Positions 4,390 through 42,449 of a DNA stretch of 64,000 bases are shown here, one piece after another (the stretch's first letter is position 1; each line of letters opens with the position of its first letter). Under the pieces are notes generated by a model. It was given only the letters and a program-made list of their open reading frames with translations. It was not told the DNA's origin and ran no database searches. This DNA comes from Ramazzottius varieornatus (lineage: Eukaryota; Animalia; Tardigrada), in assembly GCA_001949185.1 (NCBI GenBank), contig BDGG01000003.1:1098984-1162983 (forward strand). The letters run 5' to 3'. The position numbers and the translations under genes were made by a program.

Positions 4390-5770
4390 GAAATACGATG
4401 AAATCCGATATTCTTCGATAAAATATCGCAGGATATTTTATCGCAGTCTTCGATCTTCATTCAGCATCGATGTTTCGATATATTTTTCCGAAACCTTATT
4501 TTCGATGTATCGTCTCATATCGCAGCGATATATCGACATTTCTGCAGTTTTACTTTTTCCGCTATCCTACTGGTTCAAACCCAAGAACTCAAAAAGTCGT
4601 TTTCCGCATCATTCTTTAGTAAGGTTGGAAGCGTCAGTTGCATGCAGCAAAAACGTGACTGTACCAAGACTTCAAACTCATGGAAACCTTGATAAAATTA
4701 CTACCAAGACCAAATGGACGGAGCGTGTTCGCCTGCCCGGCATGCGATGGCCAGAATCAAGGCTTTGAAATCAACAATAGTTTTTCGTAAACCTGATATT
4801 ATCCGATACATTATTACCTGATATTATTGCCGAGTTTTGCATTCAGCAAAATACCGATATGTCGAAAGTATATCGTTATGGCGCGATACGGTATCTGCCG
4901 CATATTTTATCACATAAATTCGGTATATCTTCGATACGATATCGGTATGTCGTATGGTTGCCAGGACTACATAAGGGTATTGCGACTTAATCTAATCTTA
5001 ATTTAATAAGCCCGGGCGGTCAGAGTTCTAATATAATCTTGATACAATATGCCCCGACCGCAGAGCATCTAAAATAATGTTAATATGTCAACTTGTGTCG
5101 CTGGGTTCTTATTATAATTTATTATAATATTTCATCCATTTCTAGTTCCGCATATCAATGGGAAAAGTTAACTCTCTTCCTTCACAAGTTCATTAGTAAA
5201 ACAGTTTATCCAGATCCAGCAATAAAACGGTCATGAATTATCAGTTGAAAGTACCACCAAGGAACCGTCCAAAAATAACAACAGTTTTAGCGGCTGTTGT
5301 CTCTGCTGCCTGGTGCTCAGGGAAGTCCCTTCTTTCAAGCCGCGCTGGCATCCTTGGGACGAAAGTCGTCCTAAACGCATTGCAGGATCACGCTGCAATG
5401 TGTTTTTTACAGCGTGAGTGGCGGGTATGCAAGTGAGTCCCCGAAATTGCAGTCCTTCAGTCAAGTCACCACATTCGAACGTTCGTGAGTGTAAGACACG
5501 CGCAGGTGCTTGATGCGTAAGATTTACTGGCATACAGCACACTGCGCACAGTTCCACGCCGGTTGCGGACGCAAATCAAGGATTACTTTAATCAACTGAA
5601 GCCAAAATCCGTACCTTAACAATGTTAATACGGGGCGCCCTGCGAATTGATTTTATTATGATAATTCTAGCTCTGGCTTTCATCTAATCTAATACTAATA
5701 AATATCCCACCTCGGCCGAGGCATCTAATAAATGTTACTATGATATACTAGATGCAAAAAGCATCTAATA
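4390..5770. repeat. Fields of short dispersed motifs (CGATA/TATCG, then TAAT/ATTA), probably subterminal repeats of decayed DNA transposons
   Basis: Dense CGATA/TATCG at about 4395-4540 and 4790-4955, ending in GGTTGCCAGGACT. TAAT-rich blocks at about 4985-5130 and 5580-5770. No paired TIRs found. Confidence 0.3.
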
Positions 5771-11249: not shown

Positions 11250-12724
11250 TTAGAGTTTGGCGATACGACCGAGTAACAACAATAGACCGCTGGCATCATG
11301 TCGAACGGCGAACAGGAAAGGATGATCGGCGTGAAACTCTAGTGGCTCTGGCTCGATCGAAGCGGAATACTCGATCACCCCTACGAACGTTGCAGCAGTG
11401 GCTTCCGTGGACTCTTCGTTCACATCTGTAAACCCGATCGTTATTATCAAGCTCTTTTGATCGGCGAATCCGAGTTTGATCCGTAGATCCCAATGGTCTC
11501 AAATCTATACTGATCACTTACCCACGAATGCTTTGTGCACCACAGACGACACCTTCAGCGCATCATCGGCAATCCCACTCAGGTCTCCTCCCTCGCAGAT
11601 CTTTACCACGCCAAGCGCTTTCAGTTCTTCCTCCAGATCATAACATTCCTCCAGTTTGAACTTCGGCATTTTCAGGTGGATCTTCGTTCTTTCTGAAGCC
11701 CCGTGTATAACTCCGCCTAGTTTCTCCGCAGTCAACGCTTTCTCCAGCGCCGCTAGCCCGTCACTTTTCCCTGGCAGTAACACCAATAGGGAAAGCTCTC
11801 CTCCTTCGTAAGGCTTAGAAATCATGTGGAACGAAGGCAGATCGTTTCTTGTGCCGGCCAGATTACTGTAATACTTCAAAAGACTGTTGTCTTTTTCCAT
11901 CGTGGGCACTTGGCTCGTACTGCCATCTAGGTTCGTGAAGTTTCTCGATTTCGTCATGGCGGAATCCAGCACATCTGCCCATTTGTTTTTGAAGTAGATA
12001 GCGTTGATCAAGGTCAGGATTGTATTCTCGTTAACGTTCTCCTTCGTCACCAGGTTCTTGATCTGTCCGCTGGTCTGTTGTTCGACCCACTGGTTGATTT
12101 CTTTTCTGGCGTCTTCAGGTCTATCCTTGAAATCTATCGTTTCGATCGAACTGTTCAACGTGGACTGGACTATCAGTTCGAACGAGTCTTTCGCTGTGAA
12201 AGTCTCTTCCAAATAAAGGCGATTAGCCAGGTCGAGACTGTAGCTCTTTTCGCAAGACGGTTGGAAGATTGGCATGATGGTGTGGAATGACTGGAGGGTT
12301 GCTGCAGCATCCTGGCTTCCGTGGAACAGACGCAAGGTTCTTGTTAGCTCCTTGGCGGTTTCACCGTTCGCGCCTGCGTAAACCAGCATCAAGGCCGAAG
12401 CGATGCCGATCGGCGAAAAGAAGATATTGGTGTTGTTGTCCAATTTCGCTGCGATGTGCTTGTACATATCCAGAGAAAAGTGGTTGAGTCCATCGTGCAG
12501 ACTGCTGGATTCCACCTTGTTATTGACTACACCTGTAAACAACAAACAAACCATAGCGCAGTAACTAGCGTGGAAATTCTTCTTCGTATTTGTTCGCTGT
12601 TCGAATAATTTTAATGTTAGCGTAAATTAATCAGATTTTTACCCTTGTCGGACGAGGTTGCGCCAGCACGGAGCGACACTAGTAACGACGACCCAAGGAA
12701 CACAACTGTTATTGGGAGATGCAT
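11250..12724 (-). CDS. Secreted serpin (serine protease inhibitor), 3 exons
   Basis: Exon 1 MHLPITVVFLGSSLLVSLRAG (signal peptide). Motifs NIFFSPIGIASAL, INQWVEQQTSGQI, LINAIYFKNKW, MPKFKLE; intron about 11427-11521; then DVNEESTEATAAT and FHADHPFLFAVR. Confidence 0.93.
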
Positions 12725-12983: not shown

Positions 12984-14723
12984 CAGTCCTACCTCCGAGA
13001 TGTGTCAATTCAAACCCTTGATTCCTATTTGCAATGACCCATCTGTTCACTACACGGCAAACCAGAGCGCCCGAAATATGGTTAGCCATACAGTACAAAG
13101 CTGCCATTTAATACCAAGTATTCTATCACAGTCAGAAGTTCAGATCACGAACTCAGCTTCTCTCGGTCATGTGGTACACTCCAGCAGCTCTAAAACAGTT
13201 CCGAATAGTGCTTTCTTTGACTTCTGCCCATCCTCTGACAACCCACTTGACCGCATCCAAAACGTTGATAGACTTCGTATAGTCAGAAGCACTACTGAAA
13301 TTATACAGGCTCTTTCTTCGATGTTCAGCCTTGAATCTTTGCTCGTACTTCTTGTAGGACGCTATGATGCCTTTGTCGAGAGGTTGAACCTTGCTTGTCA
13401 GGTTCGGTGGAAGGAATACAAGTCTGACGTTCGACTTGCTATCGACGCGATGGGCTGAGAAGTTATCAAGGAGCAGCAGGATCTTTCGCTTCTGGGCTTT
13501 CATGCTGTTATTGAGGTTCGTAAGCCATTCTTCAAATATTCCTGTCTTCATCCATGCAGTAGAGTTCGCGTACCAACTGAAGCCCGCTTTTTGGATATCT
13601 AACTTGGCTTTCGTGAAGATGCGAGGTTTCTTCGAATTTCCAATGATGAGGGGCGGCAATTTCTTTCCGGCTGCGCTGCAACAAAAAAGAACTGACAGTC
13701 TTTCTTTGTTGACTTTTCCGCCTTTCTTCTTCTGTCCCTCCTTCGTCAGAGTCTTCTTCGGTAGAGCACGATACTGAGTCCCAGTTTCGTCACAGTTAAA
13801 AATGTCTTCGTTCTTGTAAGACTGTATGATGGTTGGGATGTCGTTGGATATCCAGCTGTCAGCAACGTCTTGACTTGCAGAAGCTTCTTCGCCTGATAAC
13901 ATGAGTAACGAAACCTAGTGAAATTGGAAGGAGAGAATTTTATATTCAAAGCCAGAGCATTACCGTGCAGCACGACGGATCCGAGGTCATATCGCTTCAT
14001 GAATTTATGTACCCATCCGTTACTTCCGGTGAACCCTTTGATCTGCAGTCTTTGCGCAATGTCCAGGGCTTCTTGCTTCAGATCATTCCTGGAAAGCGGC
14101 ATGTCTCTCGCATGACAGTCCTCCACAAACTTCAGCAGTGCTTTCTCCACTTCTTCGAACTTTCGTATTGTGAAGATCTTCTTCGGAGCTTTGTCATCCT
14201 CTGGAGCTGACAAAAACAACTCTCTCTTCTTGTCCAATCGACGCACCGTGGTTTTAGACTTGATATTAAATATTCGCATTACCTCACTCAAACACATCTG
14301 AAACCAATCGCGAGATCACAACAGCACGATTGAAAATCTCGAACGATGAAATCGATGACTTTGGCCAAGCGCAGGCTTACCTTCTTCGGATACAGTCGCA
14401 GGATTTTTTCTTGTCTTTCAGCGTCAAACGTTTCCGTGCTCGTCCACCCGTGTTAACCTCCATCTGCGTAGTCATGGTGGAATACAGTAAAAATGTCTGG
14501 AAGCTTTGAGGAGTAAAGAGAGAGATTGCTTGCGAATTGAGAAAGAAGCGATCAGTCAAATGTGCAACGGTGCTTGTTGCACGAGTAGAACGAATCAAGT
14601 GAATGGGGAATCAACTACAATTTCTTGTAGTCCCTATGGACCGCCATGTTTTTGGTTAGCGATACGGTGATCTGCATGATTCGGTCAAATTAAAGCAATT
14701 GACACATCTCGGAGGTAGGACTG
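12984..14723 (-). mobile_element. Full-length pogo/Tigger-type DNA transposon (1740 bp)
   Basis: Perfect 27-bp TIRs CAGTCCTACCTCCGAGATGTGTCAATT (12984-13010, 14697-14723) with TA on both flanks. Confidence 0.93.
13153..14475 (-). pseudogene. Tigger/CENP-B-type transposase (HTH + DDE_1) with two introns and a probable frameshift
   Basis: RKRLTL, GFTGSNGWVHKFMKRY, FNCDETG, LLLDNFSAH, VQPLDKG. Introns at 14298-14380 and 13893-13963. Exon 1 needs one extra A in an A-run to read KILRLYPKK in phase. Confidence 0.85.
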
Positions 14724-19008: not shown

Positions 19009-21979
19009 ATGTTTGAACCAATAAGTCTTCTGATTCTACACGTATCATTAACTTCGAGATTTGTCATTGTTACTTCCCAGGCTGCACGTGAAATTTTTCG
19101 GGACGATTTCGACTCTTCCAACCGGAAACCTTCTACCTATCGCTGGAATACCATCGCAGACTTCCTGAGCGACGACAAGAGGTACAATGGTGATGTCGAG
19201 GATATCTTCGTTCGAGATGGTTTTCTTAAGCTCTCTGCCGTCAACAGTAGTACGAAGTATGTTATGGCGGTCACCACCGGAAAGTTTCGCTTCCGTTATG
19301 GCGAAGTGGAATCTCGGTTACGTGCGCCACATGGAAAAGGTTTAATCTCAAAGTTTATCCTCGTTCCCGACCGTTGCAGTCTGCTCCGCTGTAGCGACAG
19401 CATCGACGATAACTATCCACGGATGTACATGACGGAGCTCTCCGGTATCAGTCCTTTCAACCAATCAAGTCTTCGGTCGGACTACTATCTGAAATTCGGC
19501 AACCAGTCGATAGCGGGTAACGTCGTCCAGAACCCAACGATATCCGGTCAGAATTTCTACTCTGATTTTCATCTGTACCGTATGGTTTGGAAGAAGGACA
19601 GTTTGACATGGTTTATTGACGGACAAAAGGTTTTCGAAACGACCAACAAGGACGCTATTGCTCATGCGCCAATGCGGATTGAGATCTCGCTGTATGTCAA
19701 CACAAAACGCGGAGGTGGGCAACCGGATGAAAAAACAGTGTTTCCGGCGATATTCGAGATTGATTACATTGTTGTTCGCCAAGAGAATCCTTACGCCGAG
19801 CCTGACTTGTTATTTTCCGCTGACTTCTCTAAAAACGTCACCCCGGAATTTCTTCAAAGCAGTTTTATTTACGGTATTGTCAATAGCAGCTTCATACCAC
19901 TACCGGCTGATTCAGTGAAAATAGCTAACGGTTCCCTCCAGCTATCCTGCTTTGATAACTCGCGGCAATATGAAAAATACCGTGTGACGATTCAGAGCGT
20001 CGGCCACTTTGACTTTCTGTATGGTGATCTACAGTTTCGGGCTCGCTTTCCTTCTGTTCAAGATGGATCTGCATATGCAATAATCGGCCTCCAAAACTAT
20101 CTGTGCGGCGCTGATAACTGTGAACGGCATGATGATACGCCGGAAGTGGCTCTTGATCAAGAACCGGGAAGTCCAATGGACAACCACGCCCAGGTCTCTT
20201 ACACTACCCCTCTCACAGCTGAAGTGACGCAACGTTACACAGCTCAGCTCACTGAACAGCTGGATCTGTCAGCTTCCGGGCATAACTACAAGTTAATATG
20301 GACACCAACGAGTCTAAGGTGGTTCGTGGACGATCAGGCTGTTTTTATCGTGGCGGATGTCAAGAAGATCCCGAAAATCAGGATGTACATGTACTTTACC
20401 TTGTTTTGCAATCCAGGGGTGGAGAGAGACGGAAACTCTTCGAACGTGTTCCATCAGTTATGGATCGAGTCGATCAGCGTTCGAAAATTGAGTAATTTGG
20501 CTGAAACGGAAGAGGTCGTAAAAACATCCGTCTGGGAAGGATGGAAATATGGGGTGCTTTTCGGAATATTAGGTGGTGTGTTGTTCTGCTTGAGTATCGC
20601 AGGTGCAGTTTTTCTAAAAAAATGGCGCGCAAAGGAGCGGCTTGGCTGGCGAAGCCGAGATCGATTGTCGTTCAAGAACAACTCGCTGAAGATGAGAATG
20701 GAAAACGACTATCTACACCGGACTATATCTGTCCCGCTCAGTGCCGGAATTTACGTGATTCCCCCTGAAAACCTTACCAGAAGCAAGTTTGACTCGATAG
20801 CGAAAATCTAAAAACACTTCAAATCGTTTGTAACATGCCCAAAATGCCTATAGGTGACATTGTGTTGGGGAAGGGAGAGCACGGTATCGTCTTCAAAGGT
20901 ATCGCGACTGGACTATACGGTAAAGTTGGGCCAACAGTCGTGGCAGTCAAGACTCTCTTCTCCACCGAAGACAACACCAGTGCGGATGCGTCGTTCAAGA
21001 AAGAATTGGACGTCCTTGCAAGATGTGGTCACCATCTGAACATTGTGAACTTACTTGGGGTCGTCACCACGGGCAGACCATCTCTCCTCATCGAATATTG
21101 CCAATATGGATCACTTCTAAGTTACCTCCGTGAACACCGACCACCCTTCTTCTTCAGTCATGTCAGTTCCGAAGGCCAGTTGTTGCCTCTCGATAAGGAG
21201 AAGTACGAGAAAGAAGGCAATCGACTGCACCAGAAACTCCGCAACGACACCAGCGATCACGCTTTGCTGTCCACGAAAGACTTGATCAATTTTGCCTACC
21301 AATTGGCACGTGGTATGGAGTACCTGGCCTCACGACCGATAGTCCACCGGGACTTGGCAGCGAGGAACGTTCTAGTTGACAAGGGGAAGATCGTCAAGAT
21401 CTCCGATTTTGGTATGGCGCGCCAAGAGGGTGAGTACGTGCTGCAAGATGGCAGCATTGCCTTGCCGATCCGCTGGATGTCACCGACTGCTGTATTGAAC
21501 AAGACGTTTAACCAGAGCACTGACGTCTGGTCCTATGGAGTATTACTGTGGGAGCTGTTCACCCTGGGAGAACTGCCCTACGGGGATCGAAAGATTGGCG
21601 GGAATACGGAGGCGTTTCTGCAGGAAATCATTGACGGGTTACGACTGCCCAAGCCCGAGCTTTCTCCGAATGATATGTAAGACAACTTACGGTCTTTCTG
21701 AGCACAAATTCAGCTTTCTATGTTCGTGTTCGAAACAAGTTGCTTTATGATTACAGGCACGATTTGATGAGAGACTGCTGGGTACTCGGTCCAGACACGC
21801 CCTGCCCGACTTTTGAAGAGTTGAAGAATAGACTGGACAGCTTGATCTCACAAGAAATTTCAGAGTACTATACAAGTCTGGACGCTCTATATGAGAAGTT
21901 CAACGAAGAACACGAGCGCGTACACGGCTCGGAACAGCTATCCGATCAGCTACTAGAAGAACAGAATCCGATCCATTGA
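19009..21979 (+). CDS. Receptor tyrosine kinase with tandem GH16-like ectodomain (paralog A)
   Basis: Exons 19009-20782, 20854-21676, 21757-21979, phases consistent. Signal peptide; two GH16-like repeats (IFRDDF, TGKFRFRYGEVESRLRAPHGKGL, DFHLYRMVW..LTWFIDG, FPAIFEIDYIVVRQ; second repeat HFDFLYGDLQFRARFP, HNYKLIWTPTSLRWFVDD); TM YGVLFGILGGVLFCLSIAGAVFL followed by KK; kinase GKGEHG, VAVK, HRDLAARN, DFGMAR, DVWSYG. Confidence 0.92.
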
Positions 21980-22841: not shown

Positions 22842-23384
22842 TTATCGCCTTCGCCGATGTCCATAGCCTGATGACGAACCGCTTCCGTACGAAGAGCCAC
22901 CGTTGGAACCATAAGAACTGCCACCTCCGTACGAGTTACCGCCACCAATACCGCCGCCAAAACCACCACCACCGATACCTCCAAAGCCTCCTCCACCGAT
23001 CCCTCCAAAACCTCCACCGATTCCGCCGAATCCACCTCCTCCAAAGATGTCTCCGCCGAAGCCGCCTCCGCCAAAGCCGCCAATTCCACCAATGAAACCA
23101 GCATTAGGATTATTCAGTTCGTTGACAAAAACGTTGTTGTTGGGATCTCCCCCGAACCAGTTGTAGGCGTTGAGGACGCCAGGCGTCAGCCAATTGTAAG
23201 CAGCCAGGGTTCCAGGCGTTAACCAGTTGTAGGCATCAAAGATGCTTCCGCCACCACCGCCATGTCCTCCACCATAACCGCCACCGCCGTATGCACGGCC
23301 ACTGCCGTAATATCCCTTATTGTAGCCATTTCCGGCGTACACAGCACCAGCACAAAGTGCTAGCGCTACCACAACTGACTGCAT
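22842..23384 (-). CDS. Secreted glycine-rich protein with AYNW repeats
   Basis: Single 180-aa ORF; signal peptide MQSVVVALALCAGAVYA; GGY/GGF/GGI tracts; upstream TATA; AATAAA about 110 bp downstream of the stop. Confidence 0.85.
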   Translation of the reverse strand: MQSVVVALALCAGAVYAGNGYNKGYYGSGRAYGGGGYGGGHGGGGGSIFDAYNWLTPGTLAAYNWLTPGVLNAYNWFGGDPNNNVFVNELNNPNAGFIGGIGGFGGGGFGGDIFGGGGFGGIGGGFGGIGGGGFGGIGGGGFGGGIGGGNSYGGGSSYGSNGGSSYGSGSSSGYGHRRRR

Positions 23385-24043: not shown

Positions 24044-25323
24044 TTATTTTCCAATGAATTTCGGTTTTCGTTTTTCTTTGAAGGCCAGAAGCCCCTCACG
24101 CCGATCCTGCGTTGGGGTAATTTGAGCGTAGAACTTTTGTTCCATGAGGAGGCCTTCCTCCAGGCTCCTTTCGATGCCATGGTTTATGGCCATCTTTGCC
24201 ATACGGACTGCTACCGGTCCATTACTGTTTATCCGGTCAGCCAGAGCTAGCGACCGCTGAAAGGCAGCATCGCCGTTGGCGTTCTGCTCTACGACCTCGT
24301 TCACTACACCTAGGTCCTTTGCTTGATGACCATCGAATGCTGTTCCGGTGAAAATCAGCTCTTTCGCGTTCGATACGCCGATCAAACGTGGAAGGTACTG
24401 TGTCCCGCCAGCACCTGTACGATCAAGAAAGAGAAACCCATTGTGAACACGTCTTCTCATTAGGTCAGAAATAAAACCTGGTAAAACCGAAGGGTACAAA
24501 AACAAGCTGTGTAAACAGCGTCAAGTCTGAACGGCGCAAACCACGTGGATGGCGTCAGGAAGCCAACAGGAAACCTCGGTATACTTCCTGACGACATATA
24601 CGCCACGTTTACAACAACCCCCCCCCCTTGTAGCATACATCATGCGTTGATTGGAATTGCGGTTTACAAGTTGATTGACCGGATATTCCACCGCTGATCT
24701 CTCCGGTGCTTCAAAGTTCAGAACTTCATACCGGGAATGATCCCAAGCGTTGTTTCTACCAGTCCCATCTTGGCAGAGGAGCTAGCTATGCGGATATCGC
24801 AAGCCAGGGCCATCTCTAAGCCTCCACCGAGAGCAGCGCCGTCCAAAGCTGCGATGGTCGGCACAGGGAATTTAACCAAGTCAGCCGTCATTCTCCTCAG
24901 CGTCGCCACGAATGGATCCACTTCTGCATCGGTCATCTTCGCTCGTTCTTTCAGGTCAGCACCTGCGCAGAACACTCCCGCGACTGTACTACGAATAACC
25001 AGCACGCGCAGGTCGGCATTCTTTGCTTGGGCCTCAATGAATTGCGTGAAGAGATGAACGAGATTCTTGCTCAGAGCGTTCCGGGCTGAAGGACGATTCA
25101 GGGATAAAATACCGATGCCCTGACGTGCTTCCGTAAGTAACTCCACCGTGACGTCGTCTCCTACTTTCGGCTCAGGTTCCGGAATTTTCTGAGTGGCATA
25201 ATTTCGCAGAGGGCAAGGAAGGAACGTTTTAACACCTGGCGCGCCTCTCTCGTTCCCGAAGGCGGCGATATTCCAGCTTGAACTTCCCAATAGACTTCTT
25301 CTCAGCACTTGTCCCACACTCAT
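24044..25323 (-). CDS. AUH: Methylglutaconyl-CoA hydratase, mitochondrial (crotonase family), 2 exons
   Basis: LNRPSARNALS, FCAGADLKERAKM, ALGGGLEMALACDIR, MGLVET.LGIIPG|AGGTQ.LPRLIG, DRREGLLAFKEKR.P. Intron 24415-24731; N-terminal transit-peptide-like sequence. Confidence 0.93.
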
Positions 25324-25806
25324 CCTAAAAGGCAAGGTGAAGACTTATTACCTATCTTAGCTGTGACGTCCTGCTGGGAAAGCAAAAATTCATGCAGGCT
25401 GCACTGTTGCAGGGGAGGAAATAAAGGCTTATAACGAAGCTGGAAGAAATGTTCACGACGATTTTTCGTCGTTGATTGATTGAACACAAACAAAAGCGCG
25501 AACAGCTGAGCGATGACGTCATCGCGAACTACTTTGGTTTGGTTTGATTGATGTGTTGGACCACGAACCGAAAGTTCAATCAACAATCAAACACAGTCAA
25601 GTTGATTATTCGCTCTGACTGCCAGAAATCCGGATGCTCAGCGCCTCCCGACCTGTGTCCGAACTCCAAACTCAGAGTGGACCTTCATAGTTATAGCGGA
25701 ATTGACGTATACCATGCATGACACCGGTTATAGGTTTCTGGGGTTTATTCTTGGAAGCAGTTATAACAAGAAAACAAAAAGTATCACCGAGAAAGTGAGT
25801 TCACAA

Positions 25807-28622
25807 TCACAAGTAAGACCGTACAAACTCCGACGCGGTTCGGAAGTCGCTTCGCAGTCGCAGGAAGGCCGTAATAGGTTCCTTCTGTTTCACCATGGCA
25901 AAAACCTTACCGCACATTTCCAACAGATTCTCCGGCTGGGCCACTAAAAGATTACACAGGGACAACAACTGATCGAATATTTCCACGACGCTGTACACTT
26001 TCATCGATCTGACACATTCGCGATACTCATTCACATCACAAATCAAAATCATAACACCGTCAGAAGTGTAAGGAAGCTCTTGGAGGCGGTCGAAGATTTC
26101 TCGATGGAACTGGAAGCCCATTTCCAAAAAAACATTCTGCCGGTTCGCTCCGTCTACCGAAACCTCGATCTGCCTGACTATTTTCGTGAAGTACTGGGCG
26201 ATCTTTCTGGCGGTGTTCGTCGTGGCGAAACTGTGTCGGGTCTCGGCATATTCCGTCTTCCTTTGCTGCTGCAGAAGAACGTGGATCCAGTTCATGGCCG
26301 AGTTCAAGCAATGTTCCATTCCGATACTGCATTTTCGCTCGAGACGTTCGCGCGCTTCCCGTATCTGCTCACGAAACTTCTGCTGTTGCAAAGTGTACCG
26401 AGATAGACCTGAAATAAAAACATGTCGGTTAGTACAGCGGTAGAAGCGTGTCCGACGAATCGTCAAGTACATGCATTCAGAGAAGCTATGCTTCATAACC
26501 TATCGGCTGCATGCAGGTGTCTGACGCTTCTACCTTTGAGTGATTCTTCCAGTTGGCGCACCGTCAAATTGTGCATGACGGTACTTTGGTGAATCAGACC
26601 GAAGAACTGTGTGCTCGGCTCGGACTTTGGCTCCAAAGGTGGAAGAATATTGATGCCAATCTCCAGTCCATAGTCGACATGGATGAGCAGGACTTGTGTG
26701 ATGACAACCTGGCCAAGATGGAAGAGGCATCCGGCCTGCTGATCCTCAGGCGCCAAGGCGGAAGCGCGCGAAGCAGACTGACGAAGCTCGTGCAGGATAT
26801 TCAGCGCCAGGGACTCACTGAGAATCTTGTTCTCCACTGATATTGCTGGATTTTCCTGTAACACGAAAGAGAAAAATTCAATTGAATCGTTACAAAAGAA
26901 GCTTCGTTCAACCTGAAGCGCGCCACACAACACGCAGCAGGCACGCATATGCGACGAGCACATACATGCACTTCCGGGTAAACTCTAACAGCCGAAATTT
27001 TACCGTTCGAAAATCCATTCCCTCCGAGAAACATCCTCCAAAAATTTTCGAAAGCGAAAACTAACCTTCAGGAAGTCACTTATAGTAGAAGGAATAGTCT
27101 TGGCCGCCATGACGTTAAAGAAATCCTTCTTCTCCGAAAGGACTTGAATGGGACCAAGAGGCTTGACCAAGTTCCATTCGGAGAAGATCGCGTCGTAATA
27201 CTGCTGCACCATTCCCCCACAACGTCCTCTCAAGAAATTACATTCAGTCTGAACATAGGAAGAGATGTATGGCTCAAACACAGCTCGCATGGCTTTGTCG
27301 AAACGGAACTGCTTGTACTTCTCCATCAGTTTACTCTCCAACGCCTTCGCTTTCTTGCTCAACTCGTACAAGTCCCTCAGGTAGCTTTCCCTTCCTTCTT
27401 GCTGTCCTTTCCCTTCCAGTTTCTGCTTGACGTATACCTGTAGTTTCTCTTGAATAACGTAGAGAAGAAACTTCTCCATGATGGCATCAGGTGAAGGGAA
27501 GATGTCTTCGATCAACTTCCAGGTCACATCACACAAGTGGTCGATTGATTGGAAAATGTCAATAGTGCTTGACTGGTACGAATATGACGGACCGGAAAAC
27601 GTCTGAATGTTTATCGTGTCTGCGCTTCTCTGAATAAAGTTCGCCACACACTGCGACTGTCCTGCTGGGAAGTTCTGTAGAACGAGAGCAGCTCGTTTCA
27701 TGGTGGTAAGGTCAATGGGACGTTCCCGATGAGCGTTGATGAAGAGGTTGATGAGGTCGTTTTGTAGCTGGCTGTACAGCTCGAAGATGCGATCGCGGGC
27801 TTTACTGTATATTTTGTCTTCAGCTGTGCCCATGTCTTTTGCGATTCGGTAGAGGCGGAGAATAGTACTTGCTGCCTGCTGGAAATCTTCAATGGTTTTC
27901 CGCGGCTTCGTCAGTTCAGGGAAGGTGAATTCTTGAACGGAATCTTGGTTTAGTTCCATGAAGTGCGTCAGAATCTTCCGAGCTTCTTTCAGCCTTTCTT
28001 GAGGTTCGCTCACCGCATTTATGCTGTCACTTAACGTGTAGATCCTCCGAGCTAAGTCGCTGACGTCCTTCTCGAAATTCTCAACCTGTAACAAGCACAA
28101 TAATGTTCGCCTTCCGACGAGGACACATTTGCAAGCACCCAGATGGAGCAGCCTGTGACGTCACGGGTAAAGCGAAAAGTTACACAGGATTACCTTCATA
28201 CCTGACGTCATGGGCACTATACTACAATATTTCACCTGTATCATATTCTGCTCAGTTTGCTCCAGTCGCTCCGTCAGATTCTTCACTGTCTGTTTCTCAG
28301 TCTTCACAAGCGCTGCTTCCGCTTGAGCGAACTTGTCCCCAAACTTCTTGTTCATCATGACCAAAGAGTCGAAAAGATCGTTGAAACTTTGGAGGAGACG
28401 TTCAGGGTCGAAACAAGCACGGCCTTTGGAGGCGTCGTTCAGATTTCCGTTCCGTTTCGAGTCAGCTAAATTCATCAGCTGGGCTCCATCCCCGCTTCCG
28501 TTCCCACGAGTCAAACCCATGTTGCGCTGGATGAAGGACTCCAGATACTCGTCCGCGTTGAAGTTTGAATCCTGAACTTCATGCCGTAGATCGCCGATGT
28601 CCGCTAGCGCTGAAGTCAGCAT
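25807..28622 (-). CDS. EXOC5: Exocyst complex component 5 (Sec10), multi-exon
   Basis: N-terminal FNADEYLESF; C-terminal DGANRQNVFLEMGFQFHR..GVMILICDVNEYREC..LCNLLVAQPENL..FLRLRSDF matches the Sec10 pattern. Four exons with GT-AG introns. Confidence 0.88.
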
Positions 28623-31729: not shown

Positions 31730-34700
31730 TTATGTCATTTCGAAATCTAAGCTTTCCTGATCCCCAGGTTTCTGCAACGCTGAATCAGATTGCTCGTCCA
31801 TGGCTTGCTGCTTGTACTGATGATCCTTATTATACTGCTCGTATGGTGCATCCAGATTGGTATAATACTCTGCCACATCACTCGTTATCAAGGTATCCAG
31901 TCTATCTTTCAGGCCTTTGAATGTCGGCGAGGGCGCGTCCGGTGATAGCGACCAGCAGTCCTTCATCAGCTGATACCTGACAACAACCTCTCGATTATAT
32001 TATTTCAACCAGGGCTGAAACAAAACCAGGACTTACAGATCGTCGGGACAGAAGTCAGGTTTTTGCAAGTGCGCTCCTTCAATTACTTCCTGAACGAATT
32101 TCTCTATATCCCCACCAATCTTTCGGTCTCCATACGGGAGTTCACCCAGCGCAAACATCTCCCACAACACCACCCCATACGACCACACATCGGTGCTTTG
32201 GTTGAACGTCTTGTTGAGAATTGCCGTGGGCGACATCCAGCGTATTGGTAGCGGAATACTCCCGTCTTGCAGCAGGTACTCCCCTTCGTGCCGGGCCATG
32301 CCGAAATCGGAGATTTTAACAATCTTCCCTTTGTCAACCAGGATATTCCGCGCAGCGAGGTCTCGGTGCACAATTGGTCGTGAAGCCAAGTATTCCATGC
32401 CACGTGCTATTTGGTACGCAAAGTTAATAAGGTCTCTCGTCGAAAGTAACGCTTGGTCGTAGGTGTTAGCTTTCAGTTTTCCGTACTGGTTGTTACTCTG
32501 CGTCTCGTACTTTGCTTTATCGAATAAAAGGAGGTTTCCTTCCGAATCGACGTGGTTGAAGTAAAAGGGCGGACGGTGTTCGCGGAGGTACCCAAGAAGC
32601 GAGCCGTATTGACAGTATTCCAAAAGCAGAGAAGGTCTGCCGATGGTGACTACTCCGAGCAGGTTTACAATGTTCAGATGGTGCCCGCATTTTGCCAGGA
32701 CATCCAGCTCTTTGAAGAAGGCCTTATCTGCACTGGAGTCCTCTTCAGTAGAGAGTAACGTTTTGATTGCCACCACGGTGGGACCGCTTTTTCCGTATAG
32801 TCCGGTGGCGGTCCCTTTGAACACGATGCCATGCTCTCCTCGTCCCAAAATCGTATCACCTATAAAAACCATTTCCATTAATATTTGATGATGCTGTACC
32901 GAACAGGTTCGGGACCCATTTGGGACCAAGGCAAACACACTCACCATAATCGTTTGTCGCAAGTGGCGCACCATGCTCGTTTTATTAGCTTCAAGAGTGC
33001 GCCACTTTGAAGAACGCACTTGTCGAGTTTGTTTGACCAGCTCCTGTTTAGCATTATGTCAAACTTACTTCGCGAAAGATTTTCAGGCGGAATACGGTAA
33101 ATATCCGCACTCGATGGTATCGGTATAACCCGAGTTAAATAGGCGTTCTCCGCTGTCAGTGAGCGTCGCAGCGACAAGTTGTCCCTGCTCTTCCACCCTA
33201 GCCGTTCTTTTTCTCGACGCTTCTTCATGATCATGAAACACAAAGCAATCACCAGCAGCAGCGTGATTCCCAGAAGACCAAACACTACTCCGTACTTCCA
33301 CCCCGACCAGCCGTAATAAGCATGGATTTGCTCAATTTCACCGAAATCCACCAGCTGTCGAACACTAACGGATTCGATCATGAGCTGACTGGTCTCCAGC
33401 GACTCGTTGTCATCATTGGTCGAGTCGCAAAACAACGTAAAGTAAATAAACATTCGCACATTGGGAATCTTCTTGACATCCGTCACAGTCAACACTTCCT
33501 TGTCGTCCAAGAACCATGTCAATTTCGAAGGCGTCCATGATAAGTTGTACGTGTGAAACGCTCTCGACAAATCGACGCTTTGTGCCAAGGGTTCCTTGGA
33601 CGGTTGAACATCATCAGGTGAAAGCGGGTTGCTGTAAAACAGCTGGACGTGATTGTCCAGTGGTCGACCTGGCTCCTGATTGAGCGAGACCTCGGCAGCG
33701 CAGTCACGGGGACGACCATCGCGCTTTCCGGGCCCACACAGATAGTTTTGTATTCCGACCACGGCGTAAGGTGAATTTTCTTGAGCCGAAGGAAAGCGCG
33801 CTCGGAACGAAAGTTCCCCATAGAGGTAATCAAAGCGGCCGACGCTCTGCAGTGTCACGCGATACTGGGTCTTCTGGCCCGCATCGCCCAGGCATGATAG
33901 CCGCAAGGAATTGTTGACTGTTCTCACCGTATCAGATGACAACTGTGTGAATGTCTTGCTATTATCGACGGTACCGTAGATAAAGTGGTCTCCAAGGAAT
34001 TCCGCAGAGATAGTTTTGGTGAAATCTGCGGAGAGTAGTAGATCGGGTTCCGTGTACGGGTTCTCTTGCCGGACGACGACGTAATCGATTTCGAACACGG
34101 CCGGAAAATGCGTATGTTCATCGGGCCATCCACCACCGCGCCCTGTGGCTATGTACATCGACAGCTCCAGACGCATGAAATCTTGCGCGATGGCTTTTCC
34201 ATCTGTCGTCTCAAATATCTTCACTCCGTCGATGAACCATGTTAAACTGTCGTTCGTCCATACCATGCGGTAATCGTGGAAATCGTTGAAGAGGTTCTGG
34301 CCTGTGATATTTACTGCTTGGTTCACATCGCCTCGGACTGATCTGTTGTCAATGTTGATGTAGAAGTCCGAGCGAACGCTGGCTTCGGTGAACGGAGATA
34401 CGCCGGACAGCTCGACGATATACATTCGCGGGTAGGTATCTTCGATGCTGTCCGTGCAAGACAGAAGGCTACAGCTGTCTCTGACCAGGATGAGCTTGGA
34501 GACGAGGCCTTTCCCATGTGGAGCTCGTAAGCGCGCTTCCACTTCACCGAAACGGAAGCGAAACTTGCCACTGGTTTCAGCCAAAATGTATGTTGTCCGG
34601 TTGCTGCTGACGGATAGCTTGAGGGATCCATCTGCAACACAGACGCCGTCAACTTCGGCGTTGTATCTCGTCTCAGCCGTGCGTAATCTTTCGATGGTAT

Positions 34701-34842
34701 TCCATCGAAATGGTGAGGGTTCTCGTTTTGCTAAGTTAAAATCATCTCGGAATATCTCACGCAGGACATTCGTACCATCGGTATGTATTAGAGCAGGTGA
34801 GTTTACGCAGAGTATCACCAGAACGCATTTGAGGAAATGCAT
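31730..34842 (-). CDS. Receptor tyrosine kinase with tandem GH16-like ectodomain (paralog B)
   Basis: Exons 34842-33069, 32859-32037, 31976-31730, with the same intron positions and phases as paralog A. Signal peptide MHFLKCVLVILCVNS; two GH16-like repeats; TM YGVVFGLLGITLLLVIALCFMIM; kinase GRGEHG, VAIK, HRDLAARN, DFGMAR. Confidence 0.92.
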
Positions 34843-40599: not shown

Positions 40600-41050
40600 C
40601 GAACAACAATTGAGCCGAGAAAAACTTGGTATGATAGGTGGTAGCAAGTTGGCGCGCACTCAGGGTGTAAGAGTAGAAGACGGCTGTACGCGATCAACAT
40701 ATTCTTTTCTCGGCATCTTATTTCGGTGAAGCAGTTGTTGTTCAAGAGTGTCGTTCAGTTAGTAGTGGATTACGCGTCGTTATCGTGGCACTCAAGAAGG
40801 AAAGGACACCAGAAGCAGCTCGAAGGAATCCAGAAGAAGTTCCTGAAAAGTATCCGGCTTGGAAAGATGGTTGGAAAAGAACAGCACGACGGGGACTTCG
40901 AGCAGTATCGGCAACATTTGGCTGAAGTTGGATGGCATCCCCTATGGAGAAGACGGCTAGAAGATATTTTGATAAACACGTTCAAAATCTAGAGTGGTGT
41001 ATTTGCAGGAGGAAGCTTCATCATGAAGAAAGAAATGCCAGCACGAAGTA
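40600..41050 (+). mobile_element. Non-LTR retrotransposon (CR1/L2/Jockey-like) RT C-terminal fragment
   Basis: LFKSVVQLVVDYASLSW...LEGIQKKFLK...YRQHL..VGW.PLWRRR matches the post-RT pattern YKSLVRP.LEYA..VW...LE.VQ...Y..RL..L.L..L..RR. Confidence 0.7.
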
Positions 41051-41099
41051 CGAGAAGCCAGGCGAAAGAAATCGTCGGAAGGAACCTGCGCTCGATCTG

Positions 41100-42449
41100 C
41101 GCTGAGTAGACTGCGCATATCTGTTTTCTGTCCCCTAATCTGATCCATGATTGCAAGAAGCTGAAAAATCAAAGCACATCGTATCAGCGTGAGTGTCCAG
41201 GGTTTCGTCTCGGTCTCTTGACATTCGGACGATCTTACCGATTCCCCGTATTCGTAGTTGACCGTGAAGAACCCATGCGGAGAGATGATCGCTGGATCAC
41301 TTTCAATCTGGTCCACGAAATCTTGCAACTGAAAATGAGCTTCTTTTGTTTCGTCCGCTACTAGTATAGCCCGCTGAAGAACCTGAGCCAGATCGTGACA
41401 ACTGTTTGTCAGTCTCTGGCACAGAAGTACTCGATCTGCAGCATGAATCAGCAAAGTGATCGTCAACGTGATGAGTGATGGATGAGAGGGCTTTTCCACA
41501 AATCTTATAGTCAGCAGCAGCCGAGGGTTCGCGCCTTGCACAAATGGTTTCTGGATCAAAGTCAAAATGGAAAGACATGTCGCGACATCCAAAAGAGACC
41601 ATGCGATATTCAACCGTCCGAATACTTGATTGATAGATTCCACAATTTCCTGTAATTGGGCGCACAGTCTACTCGGTCGCGCAGCACCGTAACGATATCG
41701 CGATCCTACTGCTCTTCGTGCGTTTGATTAGGATACGCCTGGATGTTTTCTAAAAGACTTTTTGCTGACACAGTCAACTGCCGGAACACATCATAAAGGC
41801 GTAGGTAAGTAGCACAAAAAGAACCATTGGAAGCAGTATCGCAAGTATACTCCACATCACGAATAGGGGGTACGTCAAGGCGCTAATCACGAAGGTTTGA
41901 ACCATGAAACCCGGAAAGAAGTTAGTCGGTGTCCACAACACCAAAGCGGCAGGTACCTGTGGGAATACTGATATGAAATGGTCGCGGTAGATGACCGCAC
42001 CGTACGCACAGACGGAACCGTTCACCAGAACTACGACAAAAATCCAGGTGCCGCCCCATCTTCGAATTCCTTGGATAGATCGGAATGCATCAGCCAACAG
42101 TCGATGCTGAAGTCTGGTTACAATAGCATACAGATTTGAACTAACTTTTGGACAAAGAGCCAAAACTGACGAGGATCTGCATGAAGAGGAGGAAGCGAAA
42201 CAACCAAGCGATCAAGATGAAAAAATCGAGCTGGTCAATGAAACCGGCGAAGGTTTTTCGAAACAGCTCGAAATCTAGATACATCAAGAACAGGCCGGTA
42301 ACGAAGAGGACATGGGTCCACAGAACTAGCAACCTTCTGGTGAGACACTTCGGCTCGGCGGAACCAAAACTGTGTATGAATAGTCCGAGTATTCGCAGAC
42401 AACGTACGAATCCTAGTGGGATAAAGAGAGGGGTTGGTTCTCTAGCCAT
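41100..42449 (-). pseudogene. Gustatory-receptor-like multi-TM chemoreceptor pseudogene
   Basis: N-terminal LRILGLF, several hydrophobic helices, LQEIVESINQVFG and ISPHGFFTVNY (GR C-terminal pattern). Frameshifts near 42150 and 41650-41790. Confidence 0.6.

What the first reader, a model, noticed from the sequence alone, without database searches (positions are those of the whole stretch)
19009..21979. Receptor tyrosine kinase with a tandem GH16 (beta-glucanase fold) ectodomain: candidate glycan-sensing receptor
Seen: signal peptide, GH16-like, GH16-like, TM, then a tyrosine kinase with a short kinase insert and a PVR-like YY..LD..Y..(F/Y)N tail, spliced in frame. Known: kinases of this class normally carry Ig ectodomains, while animal GH16 proteins (GNBP/betaGRP, factor G alpha) are kinase-free glucan sensors acting through protease cascades. 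I know of no described GH16-RTK fusion. Inference: a one-component receptor coupling carbohydrate recognition to phosphotyrosine signalling, analogous to plant lectin receptor-like kinases.
Basis: partly seen in the sequence, partly recalled or inferred. Interest (0 to 1): 0.92.

Follow-up and report, generated by a model that had tools for sequence, protein, structure and literature searches.

The report
Tardigrade receptor kinase with dead-glucanase ectodomain
This tardigrade gene encodes a cell-surface tyrosine kinase whose outer part is two copies of a bacterial-type beta-glucanase fold that can no longer cut sugars; it belongs to a small, apparently undescribed family so far seen only in tardigrades, and it may sense carbohydrates or another ligand.

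Summary
The window is Ramazzottius varieornatus, and the gene is RvY_06815.

**Gene model.** There are three exons: 19009-20782, 20854-21676 and 21757-21979. They give a 939-aa type I membrane protein:
- a signal peptide;
- two GH16-fold domains (Pfam 84 bits; VIA-align Z 25.9 and 21.5 to laminarinases);
- a transmembrane helix;
- a PDGFR/KIT/VEGFR-like tyrosine kinase with a ~40-aa insert;
- a conserved Tyr-rich tail.

Intron 1 is GC-AG. The paralogue has a GT donor at the same site. The public gene model lacks the first 389 residues.

**The gene is one of a family.** RvY_06820 lies inverted at 31.7-34.8 kb. At least five more GH16+kinase loci occur in this genome, and at least six in Paramacrobiotus. 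The scan noted such loci on other DNA of this genome before. No non-tardigrade example turned up.

**Catalysis is lost.** Every kinase-linked GH16 domain lacks the E-x-D-x-x-E catalytic triad. Two kinase-free GH16 genes in the same genome keep it.

**Glycan sensing remains an inference.** This copy has also lost both conserved Trp of the G-x-W-P-A-x-W strand, which I recall as sugar-stacking, and carries Arg where the nucleophile Glu sat.

**Limits.** No paper describing the architecture was found.

The parts
19009..20782 (+). Exon 1: start codon, signal peptide, both GH16-like domains, TM helix and juxtamembrane segment (592 codons, phase 1 at the end)
   Evidence: ORF. An in-frame stop lies 10 codons upstream. 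54% identical over 98% of the exon-1 query to paralogue P0001.
19009..19083 (+). Probable signal peptide (residues 1-25)
   Evidence: Hydrophobic core at residues 5-14 (Kyte-Doolittle 2.36). Modelled as an N-terminal helix 4-15. Paralogues P0001, P0003, P0007 and P0160 have clearer signal-like N-termini. No signal-peptide predictor was available.
19084..19794 (+). GH16-like domain 1 (residues 26-262), catalytically dead
   Evidence: Pfam PF00722. PDB laminarinases at E 6e-13. VIA-align Z 25.9, rmsd 2.4 over 213 residues to 2hyk.
19417..19437 (+). Remnant of the catalytic strand of domain 1: P-R-M-Y-M-T-E where enzymes have G/P-E-I-D-I-M-E (nucleophile Glu to Arg, Asp to Tyr, acid/base Glu kept)
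   Evidence: Alignment to 3atg. HMM alignment of 213 GH16 domains. Coordinates.
19795..20508 (+). GH16-like domain 2 (residues 263-500), catalytically dead
   Evidence: Second Pfam stretch (31 bits in the genome scan). Own GH16 HMM E 2e-20. AF2 of the domain alone gives pLDDT 85.9 and pTM 0.85. Z 21.5, rmsd 3.0 over 218 residues to 8xpk.
20137..20163 (+). Remnant of the catalytic strand of domain 2: T-P-E-V-A-L-D-Q-E (Glu kept at the nucleophile column, Asp to Ala, one residue deleted, acid/base Glu to Asp)
20551..20616 (+). Transmembrane helix (residues 515-536) followed by a basic stop-transfer run
   Evidence: Best 19-residue hydropathy window 2.43 at residue 516. The same feature occurs in P0001, P0003, P0052 and others.
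20617..20782 (+). Juxtamembrane segment ending in Y-V-I-P-P-E-N-L, just before the Gly-rich loop
   Evidence: Conserved in the family consensus.
20783..20853 (+). Intron 1, 71 nt, GC-AG (donor A|GCAAGT)
   Evidence: This is the donor/acceptor pair that reproduces the T-R-S-D-I-V junction of P0002. The paralogue has A|GTAAGT at the same position and phase.
20854..21676 (+). Exon 2: tyrosine-kinase domain, subdomains I-X
   Evidence: PF07714 E 3.5e-65. Apart from an artefactual first row (an EGFR chain holding two kinase copies), the best PDB relatives are PDGFRa, KIT, FLT3, CSF1R and VEGFR1/2 at E 1e-55 to 1e-47. Motifs GKGEHG, VAVK, alphaC Glu, HRDLAARN and DFG are intact.
21147..21266 (+). 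Kinase insert (about 40 residues)
   Evidence: In one search, query residues 97-139 face 3 residues of EGFR. Coordinates.
21465..21488 (+). P+1 loop / 'APE' region reading P-I-R-W-M-S-P-T (the APE Glu is replaced by Thr)
   Evidence: The same change occurs in P0001 and P0010. The Paramacrobiotus members keep APE or PPE.
21677..21756 (+). Intron 2, 80 nt, GT-AG
21757..21979 (+). Exon 3: kinase subdomain XI (the usual Arg is Cys here) and the C-terminal tail, stop at 21977-21979
21863..21904 (+). Conserved tail motif Y-[YL]-x-[LM]-D-x-x-Y-x-x-[FY]-N with three Tyr
   Evidence: Conserved in P0001, P0002, P0003, P0052, P0055 and P0160, and in loci L015, L016 and L031.
31769..34839 (-). Inverted paralogue RvY_06820 (947 aa) with the same architecture and the same position of intron 1
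   Evidence: tblastn. Protein P0001. Intron.

Best explanation
This is one intact gene for a type I receptor tyrosine kinase. Its ectodomain consists of two tandem GH16-fold domains that have lost the catalytic triad. It belongs to a multigene family so far seen only in tardigrades, in which a PDGFR/VEGFR/FGFR-type kinase carries dead GH16 modules instead of Ig domains.

Most likely mechanism, all inferred:
1. The former substrate cleft of the GH16 domains is kept as a ligand-binding site.
2. A multivalent ligand, most plausibly a polysaccharide or glycoconjugate of altered (possibly acidic) specificity, brings receptors together.
3. The kinases trans-phosphorylate the single activation-loop Tyr and the three tail Tyr.
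4. SH2/PTB adaptors dock on the conserved tail motif.

Shown here: the architecture, the fold, the loss of the catalytic residues, the intact kinase catalytic motifs, the existence of a family and conserved intron positions.

Inferred: expression as one transcript, ligand class, dimerisation and signalling output.
For: **One gene**
- The ectodomain, TM helix and juxtamembrane segment up to the Gly-rich loop lie in one ORF.
- Splicing to the kinase exons reproduces database proteins.
- The intron position and phase are conserved in the paralogue. The same exon layout is seen in L016, L019 and L027.
- NCBI models in Paramacrobiotus join GH16, TM and kinase in single proteins (P0003, 863 aa; P0052, 1029 aa).

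**Fold**
- Pfam 84 bits.
- Z 25.9 for domain 1 and Z 21.5 for domain 2 against laminarinases.

**Dead enzyme**
- 163 of 213 GH16 domains in the comparison set keep E-I-D-x-x-E. None of the kinase-linked tardigrade domains does.
- Kinase-free loci L014 and L021 in the same genome keep it.

**Constraint on the old active site**
- Y-P-R-[MI]-[YFH] is conserved in the four domain-1-type copies (window, P0001, P0007, L019).
- Arg or Lys sits at the nucleophile column in 7 kinase-linked domains.

**Selection**
- dN is 0.30 in the ectodomain and 0.15 in the kinase, with dS saturated. The ectodomain is therefore an old, maintained coding sequence.

**Extracellular character**
- There are 7 N-glycosylation sequons in the ectodomain and Cys-x4-Cys pairs in the corresponding loop of each domain.

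**Kinase probably active**
- The Gly loop, VAVK, alphaC Glu, HRDLAARN and DFG are all intact.

**Context**
- Tardigrades were reported to lack detectable GNBP1/3, PGRP-SA/SD and the canonical NF-kB pathways (PMC7056985).
Against:
- In this copy both Trp of the conserved G-x-W-P-A-x-W strand and the conserved His are replaced (I..I / A..G; Tyr / Ser). Canonical beta-glucan binding may therefore be lost.
- The APE Glu and its subdomain XI Arg partner are both missing in the three Ramazzottius copies of this clade. This could weaken the kinase.
- The GH16-like domain of insect GNBP/betaGRP is, from my own knowledge, not the glucan-binding part of those proteins. A dead GH16 fold therefore does not by itself imply a lectin.
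Confidence: 0.55

Rival explanations
1. The receptor and kinase are real, but the GH16 fold serves only as a scaffold that binds a protein or peptide ligand, or another receptor. No carbohydrate is involved.
For: Catalytic residues, both conserved Trp of the G-x-W-P-A-x-W strand and the conserved His are replaced in both domains of this copy. Related tardigrade kinases of the same subfamily carry Ig or LRR ectodomains, which are typical protein binders. A pseudo-glucanase with a non-enzymatic role exists among the structural matches (4wzf, Rv0315).
Against: Other family members (P0055, P0011) keep the Trp pair and most cleft-strand residues. The old active-site strand carries a newly conserved motif rather than drifting. 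From my own knowledge, dead GH16 domains of earthworm CCF and crustacean LGBP do bind glucans.
Confidence: 0.28
2. The protein is a signalling-impaired pseudokinase or co-receptor. Loss of the APE Glu and the subdomain XI Arg disables the kinase, and the protein acts by partnering with other receptors.
For: APE reads SPT, and the subdomain XI Arg is Cys or Ser, in P0002 and P0001. P0010 shares the SPT change.
Against: All residues needed for phosphotransfer are intact (Gly loop, Lys, alphaC Glu, HRD, Asn, DFG). The kinase is the most conserved part of the paralogue pair (78% identity, dN 0.15). The tail tyrosines are conserved.
Confidence: 0.1
3. The architecture is a gene-model artefact. The ectodomain part and the kinase part are separate genes, or domain 1 is not part of the mRNA, as the 550-aa public model suggests.
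For: Public annotation truncates this gene (P0002 starts inside domain 2). It also splits the C11 relative into RvY_15311 (GH16) and RvY_15312 (GH16 + kinase). Membrane-anchored GH16 proteins without a kinase exist (P0006, P0011, P0067). No reads could be examined.
Against: The kinase exon has no independent N-terminus. The ORF is open and homologous to the paralogue from the first Met to the donor site. The paralogue and several Paramacrobiotus proteins are annotated full length. TM and juxtamembrane lie in the same exon as the GH16 domains.
Confidence: 0.05
4. It is an active membrane-bound beta-glucanase fused to a kinase.
For: Membership of the GH16 fold. One Glu is kept in each catalytic strand.
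Against: The nucleophile Glu and the Asp are replaced in domain 1. The Asp is replaced and the spacing broken in domain 2. No kinase-linked family member keeps the triad.
Confidence: 0.02

Closest known systems
Class III/V receptor tyrosine kinases (PDGFR, KIT, CSF1R, FLT3, VEGFR; insect PVR)
   Same: The kinase domain is most similar to these in the PDB (E 1e-55 to 1e-47). It shares the HRDLAARN signature, a kinase insert, type I topology and a Tyr-bearing C-tail. A related tardigrade locus of the same kinase subfamily has Ig domains (L030).
   Different: There are no Ig domains; the ectodomain is two GH16 folds. The insert is short (about 40 aa). The APE Glu and subdomain XI Arg are missing in this copy. 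PVR itself was not compared.
GH16 laminarinases (for example 2hyk, 3azx, 3atg, 8xph, ZgLamA 4bow)
   Same: The fold is the same for both domains (Z 21-26). Core residues are conserved (Gly, Glu, Arg, His183, Trp189, Trp196, Asp199, Phe-Pro, Asp-Tyr in the HMM numbering). The best non-tardigrade sequence relatives that carry names are bacterial multi-domain GH16 proteins.
   Different: The catalytic E-x-D-x-x-E is lost and the conserved Trp pair and His are replaced. The domains are tethered to a membrane and a kinase.
GNBP / betaGRP / LGBP / earthworm CCF (animal non-catalytic GH16-like pattern-recognition proteins)
   Same: Both are animal proteins that carry a GH16-like domain without catalytic residues and are thought to work in recognition rather than hydrolysis.
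   Different: Those are soluble and act through protease cascades. GNBP/betaGRP bind glucan through an N-terminal CBM39, which is absent here (only PF00722 was found). None of them appeared among the named members of the 150 best GH16 relatives. Tardigrades were reported to lack GNBP1/3 homologues (PMC7056985).
Plant lectin receptor-like kinases (L-type LecRLK) and other lectin-type kinases such as Hydra Sweet Tooth (the latter from my own knowledge)
   Same: The logic is the same: signal peptide, beta-sandwich carbohydrate-type module, single TM, cytoplasmic kinase. Legume-lectin RLK clusters were among the nearest by language-model features (0.89, a lead only).
   Different: They are not homologous. 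The plant kinases are RLK/Pelle Ser/Thr kinases and the lectin domain is PF00139. Here the kinase is a metazoan tyrosine kinase and the module is GH16.
Mycobacterium tuberculosis Rv0315 (4wzf), a 'pseudo beta-1,3-glucanase'
   Same: It has a GH16 fold without activity and was reported as an immunostimulatory protein. It is a structural match at Z 22.2.
   Different: It is a bacterial secreted protein with no receptor or kinase context.

Membership tests
Glycoside hydrolase family 16 (Pfam PF00722) | Sequence match to the family HMM above the curated cut-off | tested here: met
   84 bits against a cut-off of 22, two stretches. In the genome scan domain 1 scores 56.6 bits and domain 2 scores 31 bits.
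Glycoside hydrolase family 16 (Pfam PF00722) | Beta-jelly-roll fold superimposable on solved GH16 enzymes | tested here: met
   Domain 1: Z 25.9, rmsd 2.4, 213 residues to 2hyk. Domain 2: Z 21.5, rmsd 3.0, 218 residues to 8xpk. The models were built on alignments that contain GH16 sequences.
Glycoside hydrolase family 16 (Pfam PF00722) | Catalytic motif E-[ILV]-D-x-(x)-E on one strand (nucleophile, helper Asp, acid/base) | tested here: not met
   Domain 1 reads R-M-Y-M-T-E. Domain 2 reads E-V-A-(gap)-L-D. The protein is therefore a homologue of the family but not a predicted hydrolase.
Glycoside hydrolase family 16 (Pfam PF00722) | Hydrolysis or transglycosylation of beta-glycans | not testable with these tools
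   This needs an enzyme assay on the purified ectodomain.
Receptor tyrosine kinase, class III/V (PDGFR/VEGFR/PVR type) | Tyrosine-kinase catalytic signature (HRDLAARN, DFG, VAVK, Gly loop) | tested here: met
   PF07714 E 3.5e-65. Motifs located.
Receptor tyrosine kinase, class III/V (PDGFR/VEGFR/PVR type) | Kinase domain closest to PDGFR/KIT/VEGFR and split by a kinase insert | tested here: met
   Except for an artefactual first row (an EGFR chain with two kinase copies), all of the best 60 PDB sequences are PDGFRa/b, KIT, FLT3, CSF1R or VEGFR1/2. The insert is about 40 residues (alignment).
Receptor tyrosine kinase, class III/V (PDGFR/VEGFR/PVR type) | Ectodomain of five to seven Ig-like domains | tested here: not met
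   Pfam finds only PF00722 in exon 1. Both halves of the ectodomain fold as GH16.
Receptor tyrosine kinase, class III/V (PDGFR/VEGFR/PVR type) | Single-pass type I topology | tested here: met
   N-terminal hydrophobic signal-like segment and one TM helix at residues 515-536. Based on hydropathy only; no dedicated predictor was available.
GNBP / betaGRP | N-terminal CBM39 beta-1,3-glucan-binding domain | tested here: not met
   No Pfam family other than PF00722 at E up to 0.1 in exon 1.
GNBP / betaGRP | Secreted protein without TM or kinase | tested here: not met
   TM helix and kinase are present.
GNBP / betaGRP | GH16-like domain lacking catalytic residues | tested here: met
Plant L-type lectin receptor-like kinase | Legume-lectin domain (PF00139) plus RLK/Pelle Ser/Thr kinase | tested here: not met
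   No PF00139 hit. The kinase has the tyrosine-kinase signature HRDLAARN and animal RTKs as its best matches. This is an analogy of layout only.

The most novel reading that the evidence does not exclude
The GH16 receptor kinases are a tardigrade-specific class of one-component pattern-recognition receptors. Dead glucanase domains would bind microbial, fungal or algal polysaccharides and couple directly to phosphotyrosine signalling. This would fill the gap left by the reported absence of GNBP/PGRP sensors and NF-kB pathways in this phylum, as an animal counterpart of plant lectin receptor kinases.
Probability: 0.2. Interest if true: 0.85.

Novelty: new variant of a known kind. Interest (0 to 1): 0.62.

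Why it matters
Animal receptor tyrosine kinases are known for protein growth-factor ligands and Ig, EGF, FN3 or LRR ectodomains. Carbohydrate sensing in animals usually runs through soluble lectins, protease cascades or ITAM-coupled lectins.

A maintained, expanded family of tyrosine kinases with glucanase-derived ectodomains would be a clear case of pseudoenzyme recruitment into receptor signalling. There are at least 7 loci in one 56-Mb genome, and the family occurs in two tardigrade superfamilies.

Tardigrade immunity and environmental sensing are almost uncharacterised, and the canonical insect sensors were reported missing. This family is therefore a concrete, testable candidate. The ectodomain is small, made of two well-modelled domains, and suited to glycan arrays and crystallography.

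If the ligand turns out to be a protein, the family is still a useful example of ectodomain shuffling onto a PVR/FGFR-type kinase.

Tried and rejected

This is stated here for transparency.
The origin of the metagenomic relative P0007 and the neighbours of Hypsibius BV898_04404 could therefore not be examined.

- The joined 939-aa spliced protein was never sent to a search or a fold. Exons were searched by reference, and the database proteins P0001 and P0002 stood in for the spliced form. Joining was done only inside a script to check frame and length.

**Searches that gave little or nothing**
- *Canonical GT donor for intron 1.* The nearest GT, at 20787, spliced to the acceptor at 20853 would run into a stop. 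The GC donor at 20783 works and reproduces the junction of P0002.
- *Word-indexed search with a family profile*. It added no new GH16+kinase proteins and was swamped by kinases.
- *ESM Atlas*. There is no large cluster with both domains. The hits are leads only.
- *Literature.* Eight searches were run. None returned a paper on a GH16 receptor kinase or on the locus tags.

**Analyses that were inconclusive**
- *dN/dS.* dS is saturated, so only dN is quoted.
- *GH16 tree*. The tardigrade domains sit near the midpoint root, mixed with kinase-free tardigrade GH16 proteins. The tree does not resolve whether there was one fusion event or a horizontal origin.
- *Kinase tree*. It was built on 124 columns without an outgroup. 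GH16-linked kinases and those with no GH16 detected interleave, so it does not settle monophyly.

**Not attempted**
Full report
**Identity of the window.** The exon-1 protein is 100% identical over its C-terminal third to Ramazzottius varieornatus RvY_06815 (P0002). It is 54% identical over 98% of its length to RvY_06820 (P0001, 947 aa). The window is contig C3:1098984-1162983 of that 55.8-Mb assembly. The neighbours are ordinary animal genes: a serpin, a DDE transposase, an enoyl-CoA hydratase and Sec10.

**Gene model.**
- A 600-codon ORF (19009-20811) is followed by ORFs at 20835-21680 and 21740-21979.
- The nearest GT, at 20787, spliced to the acceptor at 20853 would run into a stop.
- A GC donor at 20783 (A|GCAAGT) joined to that acceptor gives the residues T-R-S-D-I-V found in P0002.
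- Intron 2 is GT-AG (21677-21756) and gives N-D-M-H-D-L.
- The product is 939 aa.
- The paralogue on the minus strand (31769-34839) has its first intron at the same codon and phase, but with A|GTAAGT. The GC donor is therefore a single T-to-C change in an otherwise consensus site.
- An in-frame stop lies 10 codons upstream of the ATG at 19009.
- The public model of this gene starts at an internal Met and lacks the first 389 residues. A related gene on C11 is split into two models, RvY_15311 and RvY_15312.
- Exons were used by reference, and P0001/P0002 served as spliced stand-ins.

**Ectodomain.**
- Pfam finds only Glyco_hydro_16, with two stretches, at 84 bits against a cut-off of 22.
- Domain 1 matches solved laminarinases by sequence at E about 6e-13. 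Domain 2 matches at 2.5e-5.
- An AlphaFold2 model of residues 1-508 (pLDDT 75.8) gives Foldseek E 5e-14 and VIA-align Z 25.9 (rmsd 2.4, 213 residues, 2hyk) for residues 23-261.
- Domain 2 folded alone (pLDDT 85.9, pTM 0.85) gives Z 21.5 (rmsd 3.0, 218 residues, 8xpk).
- The ectodomain has 7 N-x-S/T sequons and a Cys-x4-Cys pair in the corresponding loop of each domain (residues 123/128 and 366/371).
- A 22-residue hydrophobic helix (515-536) is followed by basic residues.

**Loss of catalysis.** I built an HMM from 34 short GH16 proteins and aligned 213 GH16 domains to it.
- 163 domains keep E-I-D-x-x-E.
- Domain 1 here reads R-M-Y-M-T-E, and domain 2 reads E-V-A-(gap)-L-D.
- Every kinase-linked tardigrade domain lacks the triad. 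Examples are R-M-Y-I-V-E and E-V-S-L-N-Q in the paralogue, and A-V-S-V-I-D, S-I-S-A-L-N, E-I-E-I-L-N, R-I-H-I-A-E and K-I-V-L-V-E elsewhere.
- Two kinase-free GH16 loci of the same genome (C8:276k and C1:5752k) keep E-I-D-V-M/V-E.
- Several secreted or membrane-anchored tardigrade GH16 proteins without a kinase are also dead. These are Paramacrobiotus 'beta-glucanase-like' P0074 and P0102, and Hypsibius P0067 and P0028.
- Fold-core residues are retained in the window's domains. The two Trp of the G-x-W-P-A-x-W strand and a conserved His are replaced.
- A basic residue at the nucleophile column, within a conserved Y-P-R-[MI]-[YFH] strand, recurs in the domain-1 clade.
- I read this as a cleft remodelled under constraint rather than a decaying one. 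That is inference.

**Kinase.**
- PF07714 matches at E 3.5e-65.
- Apart from an artefactual first row (an EGFR chain holding two kinase copies), the best 60 PDB sequences are all PDGFRa/b, KIT, FLT3, CSF1R and VEGFR1/2.
- The Gly loop, VAVK, alphaC Glu, HRDLAARN, DFG and one activation-loop Tyr are intact.
- About 40 residues are inserted between the lobes.
- The APE Glu is Thr in the three closely related Ramazzottius genes. The subdomain XI Arg is Cys or Ser in the two window paralogues. Paramacrobiotus members keep both.
- The tail motif Y-[YL]-x-[LM]-D-x-x-Y-x-x-[FY]-N is conserved through the family. From my own knowledge, Y-hydrophobic-x-hydrophobic resembles PLC-gamma-type SH2 sites. 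This was not tested.

**Family and distribution.**
- An exhaustive HMMER scan of 1.84 billion cluster representatives with exon 1 found 2628 GH16 proteins.
- Among the best 150, those that also contain this kinase are all tardigrade. They are R. varieornatus RvY_15312 and five Paramacrobiotus metropolitanus proteins, named 'FGFR3-like', 'Kit-like' or uncharacterised. P0003 was already known.
- In the window's own genome, GH16 plus kinase occurs at C3 (two genes), C11, C9, C6:1796k, C19 and C4:749k.
- Related kinases of the same subfamily carry Ig (L030) or LRR (L022) modules upstream. This fits ectodomain shuffling on a PVR/FGFR-type kinase.
- Hypsibius exemplaris has a tandem dead GH16 protein (BV898_04404) whose model ends without a TM helix or kinase. 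Its neighbourhood could not be checked.
- The named non-tardigrade relatives of the GH16 domains are bacterial: Paenibacillus, Gorillibacterium and Granulosicoccus. Most other close relatives are unnamed metagenomic proteins.
- No GNBP-type protein was seen among the proteins I named. The origin of the tardigrade GH16 set, horizontal or vertical, is unresolved.
- The Atlas holds no large cluster with both domains.

**Selection.** Between the two window paralogues dS is saturated. dN is 0.27 in domain 1, 0.34 in domain 2 and 0.15 in the kinase. This is an old duplication with both halves maintained.

**Literature.**
- Eight full-text searches were run. None returned a paper on a GH16 receptor kinase, on tardigrade tyrosine-kinase expansion or on the locus tags.
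- Mapalo et al. 2020 (PMC7056985) reported no detectable GNBP1/3 or PGRP-SA/SD homologues and no canonical NF-kB pathways in tardigrades. They asked whether novel immune mechanisms exist.

**Interpretation.**
- The architecture is real and maintained, and I found no description of it.
- It is best called a new variant of a known kind: a receptor tyrosine kinase with a pseudoenzyme ectodomain.
- Carbohydrate sensing is the most economical reading. It is weakened for this particular copy by the loss of the conserved Trp pair.
- A protein ligand is the main rival.

Noticed in passing
window 19009-20170 versus P0002; also L019 (G000:C11:1712500-1722400): Public gene models of this family are truncated or split. 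RvY_06815 omits the first 389 residues of an open, conserved frame. RvY_15311 (GH16) and RvY_15312 (GH16 + kinase) look like one gene.
   Followed up: partly
L014 (G000:C8:271500-281400, minus strand about 4730-5750) and L021 (G000:C1:5747700-5757600): Two kinase-free GH16 genes of the same genome keep the full catalytic strand (E-I-D-V-M-E and E-I-D-V-V-E). They are candidate active beta-glucanases. A metagenomic protein, P0036, is 55-71% identical to the two L014 exons.
   Followed up: partly
L030 (G000:C4:278000-285000) and L022 (G000:C1:6031500-6039500): Kinases of the same tardigrade subfamily have Ig domains (L030, Ig_3 E 9e-17) or an LRR (L022, LRR_8 E 1e-7) upstream instead of GH16. 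More than 20 related kinase loci exist in the genome.
   Followed up: partly
G000:C3:1700923-1701354: A kinase fragment 61% identical to the window kinase contains two in-frame TGA codons. It is a possible pseudogene of the family.
   Followed up: no
P0028 (Hypsibius exemplaris BV898_04404, 562 aa): This protein has tandem dead GH16 domains without a signal peptide, TM helix or kinase in its model. It may be the ectodomain half of a split receptor model, or a secreted relative.
   Followed up: no
window 13153-13902 (-): An ORF with a complete DDE_1 endonuclease domain (E 1.5e-41), consistent with a pogo/Tigger-type transposase.
   Followed up: no
window 11514-12554 (-): A single-exon serpin ORF (PF00079, E 7.5e-80).
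   Followed up: no
window 22842-23384 (-): A 180-aa ORF with a signal-like N-terminus and long Gly/Tyr/Ser-rich repeats. It is a glycine-rich secreted protein lying directly downstream of the receptor gene on the other strand.
   Followed up: no
window 24718-28100 (-): An enoyl-CoA hydratase exon and three Sec10 (exocyst) exons lie between the two receptor paralogues. The pair is therefore not a simple tandem duplicate.
   Followed up: no
window 40957-41643 (-): A weak match to the 7tm_7 chemosensory receptor family (E 8e-4, below the cut-off).
   Followed up: no
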